64,000 nt of DNA, from contig OZ320319.1 of assembly GCA_976226885.1 (NCBI GenBank), forward strand, positions 91,822,001 to 91,886,000. The letters run 5' to 3'. The stretch's first letter is position 1. The number at the start of each line of letters is the position of its first letter. This stretch comes from Iphione sp. A-MEVVRFRX5 (taxonomy: Eukaryota). The notes under the pieces are model-generated. The model ran no database searches, was not told the origin of the DNA, and worked only from the letters and a program-made list of their open reading frames with translations. Of the stretch, positions 24,224-37,600 are shown one piece after another. The position numbers were made by a program, and so were the translations under genes.

Positions 24224-27200
24224 GCTGAGTGACTCACTGTGTGTTGACAGGAGGCAGGAGATTACAAGAATCAAGAGGCAACAAGAAAATCCCAAAGCAC
24301 TATAAACTTATCAGATGGTATTTCATAAGTTTAATTAAATAAATTATTTTTTAGTTCATATGAAACCCATTAAAAATTAGATTCATGAAAACTTAGGCAA
24401 CATAAAAATGTCACTCGCATGCTGAGGTCGCCAGTCACGCCCAACCGCCCGATCACCAGAGAGCGGCTGTTCTAAGCAGTTGTGACTTATACACGCTCTT
24501 CTCTTAGTGACTTGATCACGGGTTACCCTAAAATACCACAGCAAACCAACTCTGCATAGGTTAAACATCATTTGAGTTTATTCCAGTTAGTCAAAGTGAC
24601 AGAAAAATAGAACATCGACCTTCCACACGGTGAGCATTTGGAAAACCACGTCGTCTGCACAGGAAAGTTGTTACTATGAAGGCTTCATCTAAGTTACCTT
24701 ATCAAGGATTACCATGAAATGACAATCAATCCGACACAAGATGAATTTTTCATCATATAAAAGTTTATTAGTGACAGTCAAAGTAACAAAAAAAGGGATT
24801 TTCAGCTTTTTTGCATGCAGAACATCGGCAGATGAGGTAGGACAACTTTTCTAGCTTTTCGATGTCACTAAATGTACTTAAAACGCTTTTTTTCAGGGAA
24901 TTTTTAAACAACTAAGTTAAACTTACTAATTTTCAGTGGTATTGACATATGCATATTACCCAAGCAAAATATAGCATAACATTTACGACTACCTGTGCGA
25001 ATTTGTGTATTATAAAATTTTTGGTAAGTTTTGCTTGAAGGTTGCAAATAATGGGATAATGATCAGGGTTCTCTACATACTGAAATGTTAATATTTCGTT
25101 GTATTTCTCTGTAGTTTGGTGCAGACCTGGGAGGAGATTGTCACACTTATGTTTTCCACCATCGCGGACATTTGTGAATGATGTTATAACGCTCCAGCAA
25201 CTGGTCAGCCAGGTCGACACCACCCATGAATTGGTTGTATTCATGGATGGCTGCTGGCTTCCTTACCATGATCGCCCGGTGTCCCCCCTCAGCTGTTTTC
25301 AAGTGCCTCCTCACCATAACATACTTGTCACTTGCATGGATTGTGATAACAATGCACACAGGGCTGTTATCCTTCCATTGTTGACATAACAATGCCCCAT
25401 CTCTGACATAGCGGGAGTCTCCACGTTTGGCGGTTTTCTGCCATTGTTTGTCTTTCAGTATCTGAAATGGGTAAAAAAATGTGTATTTATCAATTTCTGG
25501 TATGGTTGGATACCTAGTGATGAAATTCTGGAACAATAGTACTCCTAGATGCATGTAAGTGTACTTCACTAGAGATAAATGGTTTTACCTCTGGAAATCC
25601 ACGACGACAAGTTACTGAAGTTACACAAGCAGGTGTACTCCTCAACCATAAGTGTTCGACTAGTGCGATGGAGGTACAAAAATTGTCAAAAAAAAGATGG
25701 TAGCCCTGGTCAAGGTAGTCCTTTGCCAGACAATTGACAACATCAAATCCTAACCCACTTTTCGATGGCTTCTCACGGCGACCTGTGTAGACACTGTTGT
25801 GAAGCAATAGTAGAAGTATTATTGACTGAATGATGCACCGGTTGTTTTTTTTAAGGGAAATTGAAATGGTTAATGCTGTGTTTATGTTCTATTTTAGAAA
25901 TTTATTGGAGGGGTTTGCATAATAAAAAAAGTAATTATGGTTCTCCAAAAGGGAAATATGATATACTTGTAAAACGTACCTGAAATCAACAGTATATCCT
26001 GAGACAGAGTCACACAGGCACCAGACTTTATAACCAAACCTGATAGGTTTTGCCGGCATATACTGTCTGATGCCCGATCGTCCCTTTGAGCGGACCATCC
26101 TTTCGTCTATTGATACTTTCTCTTTGATTGGTACATAGCCTTACACGTTCTCTGCATGTGGTCCAGGAAGGGTCTCACTTTCGTCAGCTTGTCACTTGCA
26201 TCCTCCTTTGAAGGATCACTGACATGCAACATACTCCCAACGGCTTTGTATCTGGAAATCATGATTGGTCATAATTTTACATGCATTCTGATGGCATTCT
26301 ATGTGCTTGTTAAATCAATACCACGGCTACATTGCAATGTAGTACAAATTACATAAGCATACAACAACTAAGGCATTACTCACCTTGTTCTTGACATAAA
26401 TCGGCAGGCCTATCCATTGGAATAAAGAATAATCAAACCAAGGTAGCGTTTCAGTTCCTCAACAGTGACTTCCTCCCATGTGCCAGTTGGACCTGAATAA
26501 GTGGGCTTATCCTAGATTGTCATCCAACCATAAAGGTTTGTGTTGGCACAGATAATCTGGAAATGTTAGAATATAAATGAGTTTTACAAATTGCTATGAT
26601 TGTGCAATATATATAAAATGCATTGAATAAGACATACAAACAAATTGTAATATTCCATTGCATCAGCTAGAGTCAACAAGAAGCATTAGCAATCCTTCAC
26701 CTGTAGCATTTCTTGGGTCATGAAGAGTCCAAAAAAGTTGATCGCCCATGTGAATGCTCGCATTCCATGTGTGGTCACCATGTCAGAGAAATTCACCGAT
26801 CGCTTCTCGCGAGTTAACCACGCCCACCGCGAAACGTCACAGACACGTGCTTCCGGCATAGACAAACAAACCCATCCAAAATGGCGTTGCATAGGCCGAA
26901 GACTGCGTTACTCACTGATCTGCCGCAGGGTATGAATCCAAAATGGATGCCCCATAAGCCTTCTTCTCGGCAGATAGTCCGCGCGACAGCTTTTGTCACG
27001 GGCTGTTTCGTACATGACGTGTCTCTGACATTTCTGGAAGCAGGAATTGAGGTTTTTGCTCGCTGCTACCGCAGCCAGCGGCGACGGAAGAAGCCCCACG
27101 AAGTGGGCCTGGACATAGGTGACAGTAAAGTCACATTCTGCCACTGTTCCTGCACAGCTGGGTAAGTGTCACGGTCTTTTATAAATTCTGTGGTATCTAT

Positions 27201-27259
27201 AGATATTATGTGTTGTATCTGTAATGTTTTATTCAACTGTCACATTCGCATTTAGCAAG

Positions 27260-27712
27260 CGGAGGCTGTACTGTCACCGCCACCATGTGCTGTCAAGCCC
27301 ACTGCTTCGTAGGTCTGCGCACACTTTGCCAAGGTCGAACTGTCACTGTTGCTGATAAATACTAGCCATATCTAAGTGTATGAGGCTTCTCTAATAATTT
27401 ACTGAACTGTCATGTTTGTGTCACGTTCACATTTTACGAACGGAGGCTGTACTGTCACTGCCACCATGTGCTGTCAAGCCCACTGCTTCGTAGGTCTGCG
27501 CACACTTTGCCAAGGTCGAACTGTCACTGTTGCTGATAAATACTAGCCATATCTAAGTGTATGAGGCTTCTCTAATAATTTACTGAACTGTCATGTTTGT
27601 GTCACGTTCACATTTTACGAACGGAGGCTGTACTGTCACCGCCACCATGGGCTGTCAAGCCCACTGCTTCGTAGGTCTGCGCACACTTTGCCAAGGTTGA
27701 ACCTGTCACTGT
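27260..27712. repeat. 181-bp tandem repeat, about 2.5 copies, in exonuclease intron 1
   Basis: cggaggctgtactgtcac... starts at 27260, 27441 and 27622. Confidence 0.95.
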
Positions 27713-28726
27713 CAGTATGTGTTGTTATATTCATCTGTAGTTGTAGAGTCATATTAAATGTAACCAGCAGTGTGTCCTCTCCTGTGTTGCCTGCATACCT
27801 GTGTTTCACTTTGCCATTTGCTGTCCCTCTTTAATTTCAGGATTGCAGGAAACTGTGCCAACACTCTTGCCGTGGTGCTTGCACTGGCAGAGTGGCAGAA
27901 GCTGGGGTTCTCTCATGCCCCTCAGCCTCTGTCGTGCACCTCACTCCCACAGGTTTGGGACAAACCCCGGTGCAAGAAACCACTGCCAGAATCTGCAACC
28001 GGGGTGTCATTTGCGAAGCCGACCACAAAGGACCGTAAGTGGAAACCACCCACTGCTACTTTTGTAGACAACAGGTAAGTACAGAACAATGATCCCTTAT
28101 GTTCAGTGTTAAATTACTTGATTTTCTCATTTAACTGTTTGGACTGTTTCCTTTCATCTTCATGTTATCATTTTATGGTTCTCATTGACAGTTACTGGTG
28201 TTACAGCTGCAATACAAGGTAACATATTCTGTAAGCTCTTGTTACATGGCAATTAGGTCAATGTTATAAGAAATGATATCTGAGGATATTTATTTCTGAC
28301 AGATTATCGGTGTTGTCTCCATTCTACAAACATGGAATTATATATGAAATGTGCTATAGAAAAAAATAGAATATTTCTGATTATGAAATTCGTATTCTAA
28401 TTTGATTGCAAAATAGGAATTCATCTATGTACTTTAAGTATTAATTGTTTTCCATATATTATCCCCAGGACTAAGGCCTCCAAGCACCTCCGCTTCGATG
28501 CCCTGCTGGACATTGAGGGAGAAGTTCGTACCTCCTCCAGGGGCCTCATGTTGTGGTGGACACTGTTTGTGGTCCTGCTTACATGGGCAGCATAATGAGC
28601 TACCAGGTACGTTTTGGATATGAATAGGTATATGAAATCTGACATAGTATAGGAAATAGTTGTATTTATAAAATGCACTGTAAGACTCGGATAGAGTTGT
28701 TCAGTATTTAATGGAGAAATCTCAGT

Positions 28727-30603
28727 TTGAATTTTAATGTTACAGTTCCAGGAGTTGACCCCCTCTGTACTTGTCAGGGACGCACCTCTGACGTCGTTAA
28801 AGTTGAATGTTACAGTTCCAGGAGTACACCCCCTCTGTACTTGTCACAGACGCACCTAGGACGTCCTCAGAGTTGAATGTTACGTTTCCAGGAGTTGACC
28901 CCCTCTGTACTTGTCACGGACACACCTCGGACGTCCTCAAAGTTGAATGTTACGTTTAAAGGAGTTGACCCCCTCTGTACTTGTCAGGGACGCACCTCTG
29001 ACGTCGTTAAAGTTGAATGTTACAGTTCCAGGAGTACACCCCCTCTGTACTTGTCACAGACGCACCTAGGACGTCCTCAGAGTTGAATGTTACGTTTCCA
29101 GGAGTTGACCCCCTTTGTACTTGTCACCGACACACCTCGGACGTCCTCAAAGTTGAATGTTACGTTTAAAGGAGTTGACCCCCTCTGTACTTGTCAGGGA
29201 CACACCTCGGACGTCCTCAAAGTTGAATGTTACGTTTCCAGGAGTTGACCCCCTCTCTACTTGTCTCGGACGCACCTCGGACGTCGTTAAATTTGAATGT
29301 TACAGTTCCAGGAGTTGACCCCCTCTGTACTTGCCACAGACGCACCTCGGACGTCCTCAAAGTTGAATGTTACGTTTCCAGGAGTTGATCCCCTCTGTAC
29401 TTGTCACGGACACACCTCGGACGTCCTCAAAGTTGAATGTTACGTTTCCAGGAGTTGATCCCCTCTGTACTTGTCACAGACACACCTCGGACGTCCTCAA
29501 AGTTGAATGTTACGTTTCCAGGAGTTGACCCCCTCTGTACTTGTCACGGACACACCTCTGACGTCCTCAAAGTTGAATGTTACGTTTCCAGGAGTTGACC
29601 CCCTCTCTACTTGTCTCGGACGCACCTTGGACGTCCTCAGAGTTGAATGTTACAGTTCACGGAGTTGACCCCCTCTGTACTTGCCACAGACGCACCTCAG
29701 ACGTCCTCAAAGTTGAATGTTACGTTTCCAGGAGTTGACCCCCTCTGAATTGTGACGGACACACCTCGGACGTCCTCAAAGTTGAATGTTACGTTTCCAG
29801 GAGTTGACCCCCTCTGTACTTGTCACTGACACACCTCGGACGTCCTCAAAGTTGAATGTTACGTTTCCAGGAGTTGACCCCCTCTGTACTTGTCAGGGAC
29901 GCACCTCGGACGTCCTCAAAGTTGAATGTTACGTTTCCAGGAGTTGACCCCCTCTCTACTTGTCAGGGACACACCTCGGACATCCTCAAAGTTGAATGTT
30001 ACGTTTCCAGGAGTTGACCCCCTCTGTACTTGTCACGGACGCACCTCGGATGTCATTAAAGTTGAATGTTACGTTTCCAGGAGTTGACCCCCTCTGAATT
30101 GTGACGGACACACCTCGGACGTCCTCAAAGTTGAATGTTACGTTTCCAGGAGTTGACCCCCTCTCTACTTGTCACGGACACACCTCGGACGTCCTCAAAG
30201 TTGAATGTTACGTTTCCAGGAGTTGACCCCCTCTGTACTTGTCAGGGACGCACCTCGGACGTCCTCAAAGTTGAATGTTACGTTTCCAGGAGTTGACCCC
30301 CTCTGTACTTGTCACGGACGCACCTCGGACGTCCTCAAAGTTGAATGTTACAGTTCCAGGAGTTGACCCCCTCTGTACTTGTCACGGACACACCTCGGAC
30401 GTCCTCAAAGTTTAATGTTACGTTTCCAGGAGTTGACCCCCTCTGTACTTGTCACGGACACACCTCGGACGTCCTCAAAGTTGAATGTTACGTTTCCAGG
30501 AGTTGACCCCCTCTGTACTTGTCACGGATGCACCTCGGACGTCGTTAAAGTTGAATGTTACAGTTCCAGGAGTTGACCTCCTCTGTACTTGTCACGGACG
30601 CAA
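28727..30603 (+). repeat. 70-bp minisatellite array, about 27 copies
   Basis: Unit aagttgaatgttacgtttccaggagttgaccccctctgtacttgtcacggacacacctcggacgtcctca; the period of 70 is seen at 29761 and 29831. Confidence 0.97.
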
Positions 30604-30656
30604 CCCGGAAGCACTTGAAACAGGGTCTGGTGGTTCAGGGTCTGGTGGTGTGTCTC

Positions 30657-33600
30657 TTAGTCTTCCTGGGCTTCCTCACAATCTCCTATCAAGAGTGGCT
30701 TGAATGTGGACAAGTAGTCACAGACAGCCCAGACCTGGTTCAAGGTCGCTGTGCCTGACAAGTCCAAGATGTTACTGAGGATTTGCCACTTCTTGATGCG
30801 GTTTATGGCCCTCTCAACATGCACCCGGTGCTTCGCGATGTCCTGTGTCTCGGACACATCCTGCCCGGTCATCTGAGCACCGGTCCTGGCAAATGGTGGT
30901 ATGTTGAGTCGAAGGCCATAATGCCACAGATCGTCTTCAATGAGGAAGCCCTTATCCACCATCACCCCATCACCCGGCAGGAGATACCCGGACCTCAGCA
31001 GCTCCTCTGCCAGGTCGTAGAAGCCGCTGGCTCTGGTTATTTCCTTGTCGGATATCCCCCCCGTGAACAAGGTGGAGATAAAGATGATGGTACCACGGGG
31101 GTCACATCCGACCAAGGCCTTCCAGGTGTTGCTGGACTTGTAGTCCGAGTATGTCTGGCTCTGCCGGGTCAGGGATGATGGTCGCTGGGTCTTAAACTTG
31201 GTCCCGTCAAGAATCACCATTGTGCGTGGATACTCTGCGCGGAACTTCGGGGGCATGTTTGCAATGATGACGTCGCGGTGGGGGAACAGTGGCAGGCGAC
31301 TGAAGCGCTGGTACATATAATTCACCCACCCACCAAACATAAGCGACGCATCCTGTCCTGAGATTCCGTAACGATGCCCCAAGTCCTTGCATTGTAATCC
31401 AAGGCGCAGTCTGCTCAGCACTAGCAACAGCTGATCCTCAGCAGGTATTGTCACCAGGCATCTCACCTTATGGCTAAAGTGGATGGCGTCATAGACTTTC
31501 CCAGTGGGCACCAGAAACCTGAGCACACTGTTGAAAGTCTGCAACGTCAGTCCAGTGTAGTGGCCAATAAGGTCAGGGATGGGACTCCTGTTGACACTAC
31601 TTAAGCTCATCCTGTGAGCCTGTTGAGATCGAGCCCTGCTGCGCTGTGCTGCTAGCTGGGTTTGCAGACTGGCCTTTGCCCGGGCCATTCTCTCCATTTC
31701 AATGGAGAGTCTGGCAACCTCTGCCTGGGCTGCACGCAGGTCGTCCTTAAGGGCAACATTCTCGACAGTGACCGAGAGAACCTCCAAAGGATCAGCCCCT
31801 GTGAAAAGAGAACAATGTATTAGTCACTGTATGATTATAGTCAGTTATCAAGGGAATAGTCACATGCATCTATAATATAGTGTCAAATTTTCTTTGTAGG
31901 CCAAGTACATTGCTGAGTCGCAGGAGAAGACTGGACCCAATGCCCCCCTGGACCCATGTGGAGACATGGTGTTTCCACGGGACTTCGCCCGGGCACCGTG
32001 GATTACACTACCGCCATGGGATCCAGACGTGGCTCAGCGTGGCTGTCACACTTCCACAGGCTGTCCAGCTGGAGCGTGACACCGGTGGGCAGTCTGCGTC
32101 TCCGCTGTGGTGGGAGGAGCGGAGGCACAGGGTGACAGCCTCACATTTTGCCTCCATTATGAAGAGGAAGGCTGCCGTGTCACCAGCGTTCCTACGGAAC
32201 ACATTTACCCCCAAGCCCTTCAAGTCGGCGGCCACGCAGTATGGGACCAGCAGTGAAGAGGTGGCCCGGTTGGCTTTCCTGAGGACCCGGGCAGGAAGCC
32301 ACTACCACCATGTGGGGCTGGTGGTGAATCCGGCATTCCCTTTTCTTGCTGCGACTCCTGATGGCCATCTCTGCACCAAGGGCAAGACGGTCATCATGGA
32401 GATCAAGTGCCCATACTCTGCGAGGGACATGACCATCCCAGAGGCTTGCACCACCATCAAGAAGTTCTGCCTGGAACTGAAGGATGGGAAGCCTGTCATG
32501 TCCAGATTGCATGACTACTGGTTCCAGGTGCAGCGCCAGTTGCTGGTGACAGGTGCAGACTTCTCTACCTTCATAGTGTACACGGCAAGAGACCTCTTCT
32601 CAGAGGATATAGCCCCCTGCAGCGAGACAATGGCCCAGATGTTGTTAAAGCTGGGTGATTTCTGGCTGACCCATGGAAAGCCATATCTGGGTCAGCTTGC
32701 AGCTGAAGAGGCTGAGGAGGAGGAGCTACAGGGGGGGGAAGAGGTCTAATTCTGTCACACTGACACACCGACAACAACCACGGGGGTCAACTGGTGGAAC
32801 TGTAACATTCAACTCTGAGGACGTCCGAGGTGCGTCCGTGACAAGTACAGAGGGGGTCAACTGGTGGAACTGTAACATTCAACTCTGAGGACATCCGAGG
32901 TACATCCGTGACAAGTACAGAGGGGGTCAACTGGTGGAACTGTAACATTCAACTCTGAGGACGTCCGAGGTGCGTCCGTGACAAGTACAGAGGGGGTCAA
33001 CTCCTGGAAACGTAACATTCAACTTTGAGGACGTCTGAGGTGTGTCCCTGACAAGTACAGAGGGGGTCAACTCCTGGAAACGTAACATTCAACTCTGAGG
33101 ACGTCCGAGGTGTGTGCGTGACAACAACCACAGGGGTCAACTGGTGGAAACGTAACATTCAACTCTGAGGACGTCCGAGGTGTGTGCGTGACAACAACCA
33201 CGGGGGTCAACTGGTGGAAACGTAACATTCAACTGTAAGGACATCCGAGATCTGTCTCCGACGCAACCGTCTCCTTTATTGTCATTGTGACTATTCCTGG
33301 GATTACTTACAATGACTTTGTGTCTGGCAGCCCTGACCAATACACTCTGCTGCTGCTGGAGGTGCCCTTGCTGCTGCTGGAGGTGCCCCTGCTGCTGCTG
33401 CTGGAGGTGCCCCAGCTGCTGCTGCTGGAGGTGCCCCAGCTGCTGCTGCTGGAGGTGCCCTTGCTGCTGCTGCTGGAGGTGCCCCAGCTGCTGCTGCTGG
33501 AGGTGCCCTTGCTGCTGCTGCTGGAGGTGCCCCTTCTGCTGCTGCTGGAGGTGCCCCAGCTGCTGCTGCTGGAGGTGCCCCAGCTGCTGCTGCTGGAGGT

Positions 33601-36600
33601 GCCCTTGCTGCTGCTGCTGGAGGTTCCCCAGCTGCTGCTGCTGGAGGTGCCCCAGCTGCTGCTGCTGGAGGTGCCCTTGCTGCTGCTGCTGGAGGTGTTG
33701 GCCCTTCTCCTTGGAAGGTAGGCTGCCTGTTTCCAATTGATTGTACACATACTAATACTAGTGGGTCTCCACAAGGGTCACTTATGGGAATCATATGGTT
33801 TGTCTTGGTTTTTTTTTTATAAAGACTTAACATCAGTTTAATACCTTATGACATTACTCTTCATCTCAGATGTTACTTTCATTTAGAGAAAAAGCAACTG
33901 CATATAGGTAGGTAAACTTGATAGACTGGCATGGAAAGGAGAAACATTAATTCTCATTTACTTCCAGTAATATTTCTATTCACCTTATGATATTACTTTT
34001 CATCCAAAATATTACTAATATTTCTATATATAAAGACAAGAAAGTAGTCTTCTTTCAAATACAAGCCTCTTTTATTCAGGATTAAATATTTTTAATATAT
34101 ATATATAACAAGTGTAAACAGTAATAACAAATTTAAAAGAATCAAAATATCAACAAGTGTAAAAAAATAAAACAAAAATAAAAAACCGAACTGTCTTGGT
34201 TAAATAAGGTGCTAACGTTAAATAAGGTGCTTCCATGTCCTCTCAGTCCTCTCATTGGAAGAAGCCTATGAGGGCCTTCAGGATATCACCATGCAGGTCT
34301 TCTCCTGCTGCTGGTGTTGCTGTTGGTGCTGTTGCCGCTCCTGTGGTGGCGCCGCGGCACACTGCAGGCTGGAGGAGGACCATCACATCCTCCTCCAGGA
34401 CCTCCCACACCCCATCCTCATCTTGGTATAATCTTGGGGTGTGGGAGGCCTCCGCTGCCTCCTCCTCTTCATCGTCCGACAGGACGATCACGGGCTCCAG
34501 TGGCCATTCCAGCGGAGGCCACTGGATGGCCGGCCACTGGAGCTCCGGCTGTGGCTCAGGCTCAGGCTGGTGTTGCAATTTTAAGGCTGCCACCTCCTCC
34601 TCCACCAGCACTATCTTCTGCTGCATCATCCGCAGCTGCTCGTGGAGGAGGGCTACCACCTTATCGTTGGCTCCTGCCTCCTGGTGGCGGATGAGGGTAT
34701 ATGCTTGTTCTGAAATAGAACAAAGAGTGTGCGGTGTATGTGACTCATATTTACGAGAAGGGGCATTGGCTAAAAGTGCAACATTCCACCTGAAATATGT
34801 GGGTGGGGTGTCCATGACATTAACAACAGGGGGGACACCTACTACAAGTGTAACATTCAGCAAAAACAACGTACGGTGTATGTGAGTCATATTTACAAGA
34901 AGGGGCACCAGCAACAAGTGTAACATTCCACCTGAAATACGTGGGTGGGGTGTCCGTGACATTAACAACAGGGGGGACACCTACTACAAGTGTAACATTC
35001 AGCAAAAACAACGTGCGGTGTATGTGAGTCATATTTACGAGAAGGGGCACCAGCAACAGGTGTAACATTCCACCTAAAAAACGTGGGTGGGGTGTCCGTG
35101 ACATTAACAACAGGGGGGACACCTACTACAAGTGTAACATTCAGCAGAAACAACGTGCGATGTATGTGAGTCATATTTACGAGAAGGGGCACCAGCAACA
35201 GGTGTAACATTCCACCTAAAATACGTGGGTGGGGTGTCCGTGACATTAACAACAGGGGGGACACCTACTACAAGTGTAACATTCAGCAAAAACAACGTGC
35301 GATGTATGTGTCAGTCACATATATCATGAGGGGCATCTAGAATGAGGTTATATTATAAGTCTAACTTACCAGCAGCCTTGCGCCGCGCGCGGCGGAGGCG
35401 CTGCTTGGCTGCCTCAAGGGCATGGTAGCCCGCCTGCTGTTGCTTGTTGGCCCTCCACTTGGCCGTGCGTACTCTGCCAGGGGTGGGTTGACCACGTGGC
35501 ATCTTGCTGCAATGGAAAAGTCACACAACTGAGAACAGTCTTCAATAGCTGTTTTTTTTTTGTTGTTTTTTAAGCTTCTGCACTCACATCTGATGTAGTA
35601 GGGTGAGAGGAGTAAGATGTTCTTTGAATTTTCCAAAACAATACATAAATCAGCCAGTTATGACCAAAAATGTCTCCAACAATTTCATGTCAGTGGCAGT
35701 CTAAGCCAAGAAGTGAGCTGACCTACATTCAACTTGTTATTTTCATCAAATATTTCAGGATTGAGCTGCTAATGTATGTTAAACTACTGTCCGGTATGTG
35801 CTATGTACCTATATGCACACTATGACTATGATTCTGGACAGAGAACATCAAAATAGCACAAGATTTTCCAAAAAATTGATGAGTGAAATTAAAAGTTACT
35901 TACACTTTCTGCTGACGGGACAGATCTGGTTCTTTAATCCGGATTCAACCAGCCATGACTGGAAATCCATTTCCGGTGCAGTTTAAAAAAATGTTCGTAG
36001 GTGACAGTGTGGAGCTCAGAAATCAGTTACGTATGTCTGAGATGCTTTCCTGTCGCAAAAACCTTCTAAACCGTGACATAAATAATGATAATATGTTCAG
36101 GAATCAACTGTGACAGTTTCACCAAAAAATAAAAAATCTACACCCTGGAGCGATTGATTACTTCAGGGTCTCGCACGCTACTGTCAGGGACAGGCTAGGT
36201 CGGTCCGCTGGGCAGCTACCCTTGCCATAGAAAAACACTGCAAACAGACACTTTCATTCACGTGAACGTGACAAAATGAGAGATGAGTATAGAAGACATG
36301 TGTAAGAAATGACTGTGACAAGTACAGGTGAAAAAAACAATTCCATATGTCTGTGCGAGTAAAAACGTCACGGCCCATACGCAACTGTCAGCACCCACCA
36401 CCAGGACCGCTGTCACAACCTCCACCTCGCCCTCGAAAACCCTCCCGAAAAGAGACTTCCAGACATGCAAACGTGACAAAATGGGAGATGAGTATAGAAG
36501 ACATGTGTAAGAAATGACTGTGACAATTACAGGTGAAAAAAAAAATTCTATATGTCTGTGCGAGTAAAAACATCATGGCCCATACGCAACTGTCACCGAT

Positions 36601-37260
36601 TCGCTGCGGCGGTGCTCAAAACGGGACTGATACACACATCTCTACACATGCAGACTTGATGAGACCTGATATAAGTGGAAGAAAAATGGAGAACATAACT
36701 TACTTCGACTTTCTTCTTCTCTTTGGAGGAGGTGGAGCAGTGTGGGGTTTGGGTGCCTTGCTCACCGGCCTCACTCTAGGATTCACTACCCCGGCTGGCA
36801 GAGGGTCAGGGTAGTCGTCTGTTGGGCCATCGCCACCAACAAAATGCTGAAAGAAGACAAACTTTCCATTAAAATTTCATTATCAATTATTCTTTTCATT
36901 TCAATTATTTTTTCTATCACACATATAACTAGCATGACATAGATGACCTTCAAACTGTTAACAATGACAGTACTGACAGGTAGGATATCATGATTCACAC
37001 AAACTACACAGATATCACTTTCATCCAAATTATGTGTTATTAGACTAGACAGACATACTTACCTTGAAACAGACATATCTGTTGGTCTTGATTTTCTTCA
37101 CATTGAGTTTCTTGTGAGGCCGGCCACAGAGCTTGATCCACCTCATGCACTTCTCAAGCTCTGTGCCTGGTTTGGGGAAGGTCACCCAAGATAACCCTGC
37201 CATCCTCTCAGGGTACCTGCTATCATTCGTACATCCACCCCACTCGCAGTGTATAACCAT
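30657..37260 (-). CDS. THAP-HTH-DDE (HARBI1/DDE_Tnp_4-like) transposase, spliced
   Basis: Exon 1 (37260-37063): HCEWGGC..FPKP..WIKLCGR..YVCFK. Exon 2 (36846-36704) starts HF, completing the THAP C2CH finger. A candidate linker exon is 35506-35370. The last exon (31798-30657) has YTGL, LSRLRLG, ILDGT, MVDKGF, HVERAI. Phases 0/2/1 give an open 539-aa frame; the linker exon assignment is uncertain. Confidence 0.8.
32770..33245 (-). repeat. inverted array of the same 70-bp minisatellite, about 6.5 copies
   Basis: gggggtcaactggtggaactgtaacattcaactctgaggacgtccgaggtgcgtccgtgacaagtacaga is the reverse complement of the 28727-30603 unit. Confidence 0.95.
33350..33695. repeat. 24-bp CAG-rich minisatellite (GHLQQQQL/Q on the minus strand)
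   Basis: About 14 units of ggaggtgccc(cag/ttg)ctgctgctgct. Several frames are open, as expected for such a repeat. Confidence 0.9.
34252..35506 (-). CDS. candidate basic + coiled-coil + acidic ORF (two exons) inside the transposase intron
   Basis: Exon 35506-35370 (MPRGQPTPGRVRTAKWRA..AAKQRLRRARRKAA, phase-1 GTAAG donor) joins in frame to exon 34709-34252 (acceptor tatttcag; EQAYTLIRH..LLHEQLRMMQQKIVLVEEEVAALKLQ..SDDEEEE..stop). GC-rich and stop-free. Confidence 0.5.
34735..35310. repeat. 142-bp tandem array, about 4 copies
   Basis: Repeat-derived ORF starts at 34980, 35122 and 35264 give a period of 142. Each unit has two halves beginning gtaacattc. Confidence 0.93.
36266..36597. repeat. 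duplicated segment of about 125 bp (period about 205)
   Basis: acgtgacaaaatg.gagatgagtatagaagacatgtgtaag...gcccatacgcaactgtca occurs at about 36266 and 36471. Confidence 0.85.
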
Positions 37261-37600
37261 TTTGGGCTGTGACAAGTACACGGAATTAATAAAAAAGGCG
37301 AAAACTGTCTCGGACGATGCGTACGCGTGGTGCTGTCAGGACACTGTCACGGATGAGAAGGGCTTTGTTTGTCTATACCGGAAGCACGTGTACCGATTTC
37401 GAAACTGGCGCGCCAAACTAAGTCGTGCGCGCTGATTGGCCGAGACGCCTGTCACTCACGGAAAAGCGATCGGTGAATTAGGTCCTGGTGGTTTCCTTGG
37501 TCGAAAGGGTGGCAATGTTGGAACAATATCCTTATTGACGCCAGTAGCATCACTGCAGTATGGAATAAATGCATATATTTCTCATTACTGTAGTGCTTAT

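What the first reader, a model, noticed from the sequence alone, without database searches (positions are those of the whole stretch)
28727..33245. The crossed-exon cassette is bracketed by inverted arrays of one 70-bp unit
Seen: about 27 copies lie on the left and about 6.5 inverted copies on the right, abutting the stop codons of the two catalytic exons (within about 55 and 20 bp). Relative to each gene, its own last intron contains the unit in the same sense, and its 3' UTR runs into the complement. Inference: (a) each transcript could fold back to bring the distant donor and acceptor together or to form dsRNA; (b) recombination between the arrays would flip the cassette and swap which N-terminus faces which catalytic exon. 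The exon phases do not match directly after a flip, which argues against a productive switch.
Basis: partly seen in the sequence, partly recalled or inferred. Interest (0 to 1): 0.7.

Follow-up and report, generated by a model that had tools for sequence, protein, structure and literature searches.

The report
Inverted repeat arrays inside a jumping gene
The two mirror-image arrays of a 70-base unit are real, but they sit inside an ordinary, recently active two-gene jumping gene (ISL2EU type); they look like unstable repeat expansions, and in one of about 22 copies they have let the middle of the element flip over and break both genes.

Summary
Observation confirmed. A 70-bp unit forms 26.8 copies at 28736-30609 and 6.7 inverted copies at 32782-33249. 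The arrays start 47 nt and 20-32 nt beyond the stop codons of a DDE transposase exon (-) and a YqaJ exonuclease exon (+).

The stretch is the core of a 10.7-kb ISL2EU DNA transposon (26793-37476, AT duplications, 13-bp terminal inverted repeats). The genome holds at least 22 near-full copies at 95-99% identity. Other notes of this scan already describe this family and the same arrays on other copies.

The crossed-exon layout is supported by homology and by coherent splice phases in most copies. A scallop and an acorn-worm relative share the layout but have no such arrays.

All 20 copies I could read carry both arrays, with 3-40 units on the left and 2.7-10 on the right. Diverged, compact relatives in the same genome leave room for at most about one unit on the left.

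One complete copy (C10:19199034-19208603) has the 2.2-kb core inverted between normally oriented flanks, so array-mediated flipping has happened. Acceptor phases (1 versus 0) make a flip non-productive.

Best reading: lineage-specific, recombination-prone minisatellites with no shown function. A roughly 430-bp RNA duplex is possible but untested, because no sequencing run was listed. Interest is modest.

The parts
26793..37476 (.). Whole ISL2EU-type DNA transposon copy (10,684 bp). It is flanked by AT at 26791-26792 and 37477-37478.
   Evidence: Homology to 10 other copies begins and ends at these positions. AT flanks are present in 10 of 11 left junctions and in all 10 right junctions read, mostly within an A-AT...AT-T context.
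26793..26805 (+). Left terminal inverted repeat (13 bp perfect). A subterminal inverted repeat lies at 26843-26873.
37464..37476 (-). Right terminal inverted repeat. A subterminal inverted repeat lies at 37361-37391.
26881..27161 (+). Gene B (SWIM-like plus YqaJ), exon 1, with the ATG at 26881. The donor G|GTAAGT leaves phase 2.
   Evidence: tblastn with P0125 and P0148; splice site read.
27238..27712 (.). 181-bp tandem repeat (2.6 copies) in intron 1 of gene B.
27841..28074 (+). Gene B exon 2, the second half of the SWIM-like finger. Phase 2 in and phase 2 out.
   Evidence: tblastn with P0129 (E 9e-18) and P0125.
28469..28606 (+). Gene B exon 3. It is 139 nt in the other copies, phase 2 in and phase 0 out. 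The window copy lacks 1 nt here, which shifts the frame.
28736..30609 (+). Left 70-bp array, 26.8 units. It lies in the last intron of gene B and in the 3' flank of gene A.
30657..31798 (-). Gene A (transposase) last exon, holding the HTH_Tnp_4 and DDE_Tnp_4 domains. The acceptor is at 31799|31798 (phase 1) and the stop codon at 30657-30659.
   Evidence: Pfam. tblastn at 43-47% identity to THAP-DDE proteins. Acceptor read.
31900..32749 (+). Gene B last exon (YqaJ exonuclease domain). The acceptor is at 31899|31900, phase 0 in the other copies. The window copy lacks 2 nt near 32027.
32782..33249 (-). Right 70-bp array, 6.7 units, inverted relative to the left array. It lies in the last intron of gene A and in the 3' flank of gene B.
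33347..33697 (.). 24-bp tandem repeat (14.8 copies) in the transposase intron.
34729..35310 (-). Older, diverged array of a related 72-bp unit, organised as a 142-bp higher-order repeat (4.1 copies). It has the same orientation as the right 70-bp array.
   Evidence: (unit types B, D and H share the AATGTTAC and GTCACGGAC blocks).
36766..36846 (-). Gene A exon 2, the C-terminal part of the THAP domain. The acceptor is clear; the donor is predicted only.
37063..37260 (-). Gene A exon 1, the N-terminal part of the THAP domain. The ATG is at 37260 and the donor AAG|GTAAGT leaves phase 0.
   Evidence: Pfam THAP at E 0.0011 on a partial domain. tblastn at 50-58% identity to the N-termini of THAP-DDE proteins.

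Best explanation
The arrays are lineage-specific minisatellite expansions of a 70-bp unit, and they lie inside a young, multi-copy ISL2EU DNA transposon.

The element has two genes: a THAP-HTH-DDE transposase on the minus strand and a SWIM-like-YqaJ exonuclease on the plus strand. Their terminal exons are interleaved, which is a family-wide layout. One array sits behind each terminal exon. Each array is therefore in one gene's last intron and in the other gene's 3' flank.

The arrays were inherited from the master copy of this subfamily. They expand and contract freely and have no demonstrated role in transposition or splicing.

As long inverted homologies 2.2 kb apart, they serve as recombination substrates. 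They exchange unit variants, and occasionally the two-exon core inverts. That inversion disables both genes because the acceptor phases differ.

Shown here: the anatomy, the copy-number variation, the one flipped copy, the absence of arrays in relatives, and the phase mismatch. Inferred: that the arrays are selectively neutral, and that the inversion arose by recombination between the arrays.
For: - **Multi-copy element.** The genome search lists at least 22 near-full cassettes at 95-99% identity. Homology ends at sharp boundaries with a 13-bp terminal inverted repeat and AT flanks. This matches the published ISL2EU definition (PMC4482050).
- **Genes.** DDE_Tnp_4, HTH_Tnp_4 and YqaJ are found by Pfam, and a partial THAP domain as well.
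- **Crossed exons.** They map by tblastn with full-length THAP-DDE and SWIM-YqaJ proteins. Canonical splice sites give a coherent reading frame in most copies.
- **Layout without arrays elsewhere.** The same crossed layout occurs in a scallop locus (L043) and an acorn-worm locus (L044). A third contig (L041) has the same head-to-head core. None of the three has inverted arrays bracketing the core.
- **Variable copy number.** All 20 copies read carry both arrays. Eleven copies measured in full have 4.9-39.9 units on the left and 2.7-6.7 on the right. The others range from about 3 to 21 on the left, and the flipped copy has 10 and 10.
- **Diverged relatives are compact.** In-genome relatives at 81-86% identity span only 4.6 and 5.6 kb. 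Their coordinates leave room for at most about one unit on the left.
- **Flipped copy.** In the copy at C10, both termini and both flanks beyond the arrays are on the plus strand and the cassette is on the minus strand.
- **Mosaic arrays.** Right arrays mix left-type and right-type units, and a few left arrays hold units with one of the two right-type signatures (CCACCAG).
- **Unit structure.** The unit alone folds no better than shuffled sequence (z +1.5 to +3.4).
Against: - Presence of both arrays in every young copy is equally expected if they are functional, so inheritance and selection cannot be separated with these data.
- Both mRNAs would carry the same-sense unit in their 3' UTRs. In 9 of 11 copies the array behind the transposase stop holds no poly(A)-type hexamer, and no right array holds one. 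This symmetry could reflect function.
- The core motif GTCACRGAC occurs 19 times in the window, all inside the element, against 0.73 expected. Its strand polarity mirrors about the centre, and one site lies 45 nt from the left end. That pattern would also fit a protein-binding role.
- The flipped copy rests on the assembly alone, because no reads could be examined.
- The junction on the YqaJ side of the flipped copy is not a simple in-register crossover; about 24 nt are missing.
Confidence: 0.72

Rival explanations
1. The arrays act at the RNA level. Each pre-mRNA contains one array in its last intron and the complementary array in its 3' UTR. It therefore folds into a long imperfect double-stranded stem of about 430 bp around the terminal exon. 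That stem could feed ADAR editing, nuclear retention or small-RNA production and so limit the element's own expression, or it could influence use of the terminal exon.
For: The predicted inter-array duplex is -814 to -833 kcal/mol with 432-442 pairs. The arms folded alone give -110 and -143 kcal/mol. The unit has little structure of its own, so the arrays stay free to pair. In 9 of 11 copies the first poly(A)-type hexamer behind the transposase stop lies beyond the array, and behind the YqaJ stop it does so in all 11, so transcripts probably run through the arrays.
Against: No RNA data could be obtained. Relatives with the same crossed layout lack arrays, and so, on the left side, do compact in-genome relatives. 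The arrays are therefore not needed for the long-range splice. The stem would enclose the acceptor about 1.2 kb inside the loop rather than bring it to the donor.
Confidence: 0.12
2. The arrays are clusters of binding sites for an element-encoded DNA-binding protein (the THAP domain of the transposase or the SWIM-like protein). They would act as the secondary binding sites proposed for tandem repeats in other transposons, helping synapsis or titrating the transposase.
For: GTCACRGAC is 26-fold over-represented in the window, is confined to the element, has mirrored polarity in the two halves, and has one copy 45 nt from the left terminus. Tandem repeats in or near the terminal inverted repeats of Galileo have been proposed to hold secondary transposase-binding sites (PMC3573991).
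Against: The arrays lie 1.9 and 4.2 kb from the ends, not at or near the termini. The motif count is inflated by the repeats themselves. No matching site was found at the right terminus. Relatives lack the arrays.
Confidence: 0.1
3. The inverted arrays make the two-exon core a programmed invertible switch. Flipping would turn both genes off and flipping back would restore them, or it would swap N-termini between the catalytic exons. The element's own YqaJ exonuclease might drive the flipping.
For: One copy is flipped. Left-type and right-type unit variants are mixed between arrays in several lineages, as repeated flips with different crossover points would produce. The element encodes a lambda-exonuclease-type nuclease.
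Against: - Only 1 of at least 22 copies is flipped.
- Acceptor phases are 1 and 0, so no in-frame chimeras form.
- No site-specific recombinase is encoded.
- The right-type variant GTGGTTGTTG never appears in left arrays (0 of 278 units against 40 of 90 on the right). This argues against frequent reciprocal flipping.
- Array patterns follow copy lineages, so exchange events were few.
Confidence: 0.04
4. The flipped copy on C10 is an assembly error, and the arrays have never mediated an inversion.
For: Inverted repeats of about 0.7 kb around a 2.15-kb spacer can be mis-oriented by an assembler. No reads could be examined, and no further sequence could be fetched.
Against: The whole structure is about 3.6 kb, which is shorter than typical long reads. 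The copy has its own private array composition and a private junction on the YqaJ side lacking about 24 nt. It lies within a complete 9.57-kb element deep inside a 118-Mb contig.
Confidence: 0.12

Closest known systems
ISL2EU group of the PIF/Harbinger-ISL2EU-Spy (PHIS) superfamily of DNA transposons (Han et al. 2015, PMC4482050; Etchegaray et al. 2022, PMC9179366)
   Same: AT target-site duplication in an A|AT|T context; short terminal inverted repeats; a transposase with THAP, HTH and DDE domains; a second gene with a YqaJ exonuclease domain; occurrence in animals, including fish and molluscs.
   Different: The element is 10.7 kb, against an average of about 4.8 kb reported for autonomous consensus sequences. 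The extra length comes from several internal tandem arrays. The terminal inverted repeat starts with TC rather than the usual GG. The papers read here describe two ORFs but mention neither the interleaved exons nor internal inverted arrays.
Foldback-like transposons with internally repetitive inverted repeats: Galileo (PMC3573991) and Tetris (PMC4079207)
   Same: Tandem repeats in inverted orientation on the two sides of a DNA transposon; copy numbers that differ between the two sides and among copies; recombination and structural dynamism among copies.
   Different: In those elements the tandem repeats are part of the long terminal inverted repeats themselves. Here the arrays are internal, 1.9 and 4.2 kb from the ends. 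They lie within introns and 3' flanks of the genes and bracket only the two catalytic exons. The superfamily also differs (P or unclassified versus PHIS).
Inversions by homologous recombination between inverted repeats, such as chloroplast inverted-repeat isomers and the human F8 intron 22 inversion (my own knowledge; not checked here)
   Same: Two long inverted homologies flank a segment that is found in both orientations. The inversion disrupts genes that span a breakpoint.
   Different: Here the event is seen as one fixed copy among paralogous transposon copies, not as isomers at a single locus. Its frequency is unknown.
Intronic complementary sequences that drive exon circularisation or long-range RNA bridges (my own knowledge; not checked here)
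   Same: Inverted repeats in one transcript flank exonic sequence and could pair.
   Different: The bracketed exon is the terminal exon and has no downstream donor, so back-splicing is not possible. One arm lies in the 3' UTR rather than in an intron.

Membership tests
ISL2EU DNA transposons (PHIS superfamily) | 2-bp AT target-site duplication within an A|AT|T target | tested here: met
   AT precedes the element in 10 of 11 copies (GT in one) and follows it in all 10 right junctions read. The base before is A in most copies and the base after is T in 6 of 10. Definition taken from PMC4482050.
ISL2EU DNA transposons (PHIS superfamily) | Transposase with DDE (DDE_Tnp_4), HTH and N-terminal THAP domains | tested here: met
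   DDE_Tnp_4 at E 6.6e-40 and HTH_Tnp_4 at E 5.1e-11. The THAP exon scores E 0.0011 as a partial domain and is 50-58% identical to the N-termini of THAP-DDE proteins.
ISL2EU DNA transposons (PHIS superfamily) | [quoted passage not shown] | tested here: met
   YqaJ at E 5.6e-14. Homologs are SWIM-YqaJ proteins. In the window copy this gene carries two frameshifting deletions.
ISL2EU DNA transposons (PHIS superfamily) | Terminal inverted repeats of 6-259 bp, usually starting with GG | tested here: inconclusive
   A 13-bp perfect terminal inverted repeat is present, but it starts with TC rather than GG. The source says only 'usually'.
ISL2EU DNA transposons (PHIS superfamily) | Placement of the DDE domain inside the ISL2EU clade in a tree | not tested
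   No tree was built. The best hits are THAP-DDE_Tnp_4 proteins that sit next to YqaJ genes.
Foldback-like elements (FB, Galileo, Tetris) | Long terminal inverted repeats that are themselves made of tandem subrepeats and reach the element's ends | tested here: not met
   The arrays are internal (28736-30609 and 32782-33249) while the ends are at 26793 and 37476. The terminal repeats are 13 bp.
Programmed invertible DNA switches (site-specific invertases) | A dedicated recombinase and alternative productive products in the two orientations | tested here: not met
   Pfam scans of the catalytic exons and several other ORFs of the element gave only DDE, HTH, YqaJ and THAP. Acceptor phases 1 and 0 give no in-frame chimeras.
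Intronic inverted repeats that promote circular RNA | Complementary repeats in the introns on both sides of an internal exon that has a downstream donor | tested here: not met
   The bracketed exons are terminal ones ending in stop codons, and one arm lies downstream of the stop.

The most novel reading that the evidence does not exclude
The mirrored arrays are a built-in self-limiting device. Every pre-mRNA of either gene folds into a double-stranded stem of about 430 bp around its catalytic exon. This would tie expression of both transposon genes to the host's dsRNA pathways (editing, small RNAs). The same arrays would let the core flip into a dead orientation, perhaps helped by the element's own lambda-exonuclease-like nuclease.
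Probability: 0.08. Interest if true: 0.6.

Novelty: new member of a known kind. Interest (0 to 1): 0.3.

Why it matters
The result turns an apparent oddity of a locus into a described feature of a young ISL2EU transposon family.

Three points may be useful to people who study transposons:
- The arrays are a recent, subfamily-specific addition, not part of the conserved interleaved design.
- They vary from about 3 to 40 units among copies only about 2% apart, so they are fast-evolving markers of copy lineages.
- One complete copy has its catalytic core inverted between them. This is a concrete example of how internal inverted repeats can inactivate an autonomous element without touching its ends.

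If the predicted RNA duplex forms in vivo, it would be a simple system for testing self-generated dsRNA from a DNA transposon in a vertebrate. Nothing here shows that it does.

Tried and rejected
- **Sequencing reads.** The look-up of sequencing runs listed no run for the cassette. Neither splicing nor flipped molecules could be tested, and read laying was not used.
- **More genome sequence.** I did not try to obtain those letters another way. I used coordinates only, from searches run with no loci returned.
- **The unit as a structured RNA.** Rejected: two-unit stretches fold no better than shuffled sequence on either strand.
- **The unit as a genome-wide satellite.** All listed matches lie inside copies of this family. 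The lists are capped, so this is a lower bound.
- **The array-plus-cassette segment as an independent nested mobile element.** Rejected: every cassette at 95% identity or more has the element's outer parts at the expected distance.
- **Exact crossover in the flipped copy.** Unit typing shows left-type units on both sides and one right-type unit at the distal right end. The junction on the YqaJ side lacks about 24 nt, so a single in-register exchange does not explain it fully.
- **The transposase exon before the last intron.** It must end in phase 1, and I could not place it without RNA data.
- **Spliced products.** The exons were examined one by one by reference.
Full report
**1. Observation**

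Tandem Repeats Finder reports a 70-bp array at 28736-30609 (26.8 copies, 91% matches). It reports a second array at 32782-33249 (6.7 copies) whose consensus is the reverse complement of the first. The inverted-repeat search finds 487-nt arms that are 88% complementary and 2176 nt apart.

Two ORFs run outward from the centre between the arrays. ORF 30657-31787 on the minus strand carries HTH_Tnp_4 and DDE_Tnp_4. ORF 31880-32749 on the plus strand carries YqaJ. The stop codons lie 47 nt from the left array and 20-32 nt from the right array.

**2. What the stretch belongs to**

The 2.2-kb core has at least 22 near-full matches at 95-99% identity on many contigs of the same 1.18-Gb genome. I compared 8-kb flanks of ten copies with the window. 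Homology starts sharply at about 26792 and ends at about 37478.

The ends are a 13-bp perfect terminal inverted repeat. AT flanks the element on both sides, in 10 of 11 left junctions and in all 10 right junctions read, usually inside A-AT...AT-T. A 31-nt subterminal inverted repeat lies 50-110 nt from each end.

Han et al. define ISL2EU elements by three features: the AT duplication with an A|AT|T target, a THAP-HTH-DDE transposase, and a second ORF with a YqaJ domain (PMC4482050; also PMC9179366). All three are met here. Earlier notes of this scan reached the same identification on other copies, and one first-reader note describes the same inverted 70-bp arrays elsewhere. I tested the identification independently.

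**3. The crossed exons are real and are a family trait**

Full-length homologs map onto the element exon by exon.

- THAP-DDE proteins match 37260-37063, then 36861-36766, then 31793-30681, all on the minus strand.
- SWIM-YqaJ proteins match 26911-27162, 27842-28075, 28526-28615 and 32015-32689, all on the plus strand.

Canonical splice sites sit at the predicted borders. In the other copies the gene B exons join in one frame: phase 2, then phase 2, then phase 0, with the last acceptor at 31899|31900.

The window copy has a 1-nt deletion in exon 3 and a 2-nt deletion in the YqaJ exon, so its gene B is broken. Its long ORF from 31880 is partly an artefact of that deletion. The last acceptor of the transposase, at 31799|31798, is phase 1. 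I could not place the exon before it.

The same interleaving is present in a scallop locus (L043) and an acorn-worm locus (L044). A third contig (L041) has the same head-to-head core. I examined the exons by reference one at a time and did not join them into a spliced protein for any search.

**4. The arrays are specific to this subfamily and unstable**

All 20 copies I could read carry both arrays. Eleven copies measured over 8-kb flanks have 4.9-39.9 units on the left and 2.7-6.7 on the right. Unit typing of the other nine gives about 3 to 21 units on the left, and the flipped copy has 10 units on each side.

The distant relatives L041, L043 and L044 have no inverted arrays around the core. 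Inside this genome, diverged relatives at 81-86% identity are compact.

- C2:127427717-127432347 spans 4.6 kb.
- C4:63960350-63965960 spans 5.6 kb. In this copy only about 72 nt separate the flank from the core on the left, which is room for one unit at most.
- The C2 copy keeps about 1.7 units on the right.

A diverged 72-bp relative of the unit forms an older array at 34729-35310, in the same orientation as the right array. The arrays therefore look like recent expansions of a pre-existing short sequence.

**5. Recombination between the arrays**

In one copy the left terminus (C10:19199034-19199472), the flank beyond the left array (19200453-19200953), the flank beyond the right array (19204915-19205419) and the right terminus (19208075-19208603) are all on the plus strand. 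The core (19201620-19203768) is on the minus strand.

The element is complete (9.57 kb) and 98% identical to the window over both termini and the core. All other near-full copies have the standard orientation.

Unit typing shows that one variant (GTGGTTGTTG in place of TCTGTACTTG) occurs only in right arrays: 40 of 90 units there against 0 of 278 in left arrays. Left-type units fill the right arrays of one lineage (four copies). A few units with one of the two right-type signatures (CCACCAG) sit in left arrays. Some exchange has therefore occurred, but events were few and follow copy lineages.

In the flipped copy the array now next to the DDE end carries left-type units and one right-type unit at its distal end, as an inversion predicts. 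The junction at the YqaJ end lacks about 24 nt, so I cannot reconstruct the crossover exactly. The flip rests on the assembly alone.

**6. Consequence of a flip**

After inversion, the transposase's upstream donor (phase 1) would face the YqaJ acceptor (phase 0). The gene B donor (phase 0) would face the DDE acceptor (phase 1). The flipped copy is therefore most simply a dead, non-autonomous copy.

**7. RNA-level possibilities**

The arrays contain almost no poly(A)-type hexamers. In 9 of 11 copies the first such hexamer after the transposase stop lies just beyond the left array, at a distance that scales with array length. After the YqaJ stop it lies 0.55-1.3 kb downstream, beyond the right array, in all 11.

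If so, both mRNAs carry the same-sense unit in their 3' UTRs. Each pre-mRNA would also hold the complement in its last intron. The predicted duplex is -814 to -833 kcal/mol with 432-442 pairs, against -110 and -143 kcal/mol for the arms folded alone. The unit itself is not structured.

Long dsRNA of this kind is a known substrate of editing and small-RNA pathways (established knowledge), but nothing here shows that it forms. The stem would enclose the acceptor and the whole terminal exon, so it would not bring donor and acceptor together. Relatives manage the same long splice without arrays.

**8. DNA-level possibility**

The core motif GTCACRGAC occurs 19 times in the window, against 0.73 expected. 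All 19 are inside the element, on the plus strand in the left half and on the minus strand in the right half. One site lies 45 nt from the left end. This is a lead towards a protein-binding role like the one proposed for the tandem repeats of Galileo (PMC3573991). The count is inflated by the repeats, and no such site lies at the right end.

**9. Verdict**

The structure is a decorated member of a known transposon group, and the arrays have no shown function. Novelty: a new member of a known kind. Interest is modest.

Noticed in passing
window 28521 and 32027 (gene B exon 3 and the YqaJ exon): The window copy lacks 1 nt and 2 nt that all other aligned copies have (10 for the exon 3 site, 15 for the YqaJ site), so its SWIM-YqaJ gene is frameshifted. 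The 2-nt deletion also removes an in-frame ATG just before the YqaJ domain and creates the misleadingly long ORF that starts at 31880.
   Followed up: yes
L022:492-5729 (copy at C2:108889357-108897657): The right 70-bp array of this copy is split by an insertion of about 5.2 kb. The insertion carries an intact 945-aa ORF with endonuclease and reverse-transcriptase domains, so it is a LINE retrotransposon.
   Followed up: partly
window 27841-27900 (gene B exon 2): The SWIM-like finger reads C-x-C...C-A-N where homologs have C-x-H, so the last zinc ligand His appears to be Asn. I did not check whether the other copies share this.
   Followed up: no
window 34252-34700, minus strand: An ORF with a coiled-coil and an acidic tract ends in a stop inside the transposase's last intron. 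Poly(A)-type hexamers for the plus-strand gene lie at 34081-34177. The ORF could be an alternative terminal exon giving a THAP-only product. Another note of this scan raises the same point.
   Followed up: no
window 25889-26098, minus strand: A fragment of a piggyBac-type transposase (DDE_Tnp_1_7, E 2e-09) lies just left of the ISL2EU element.
   Followed up: no
L044:10694-12683 (acorn-worm ISL2EU): In this relative, long (TGTA)n and (ACAT)n microsatellites in mutually inverted sense flank small transposase exons. They do not bracket the two-exon core.
   Followed up: partly
G000 C2:127427717-127432347 and C4:63960350-63965960: Compact relatives of the family (4.6 and 5.6 kb, 72-86% identical) lack most of the internal arrays. 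They would show the state before the arrays expanded.
   Followed up: partly
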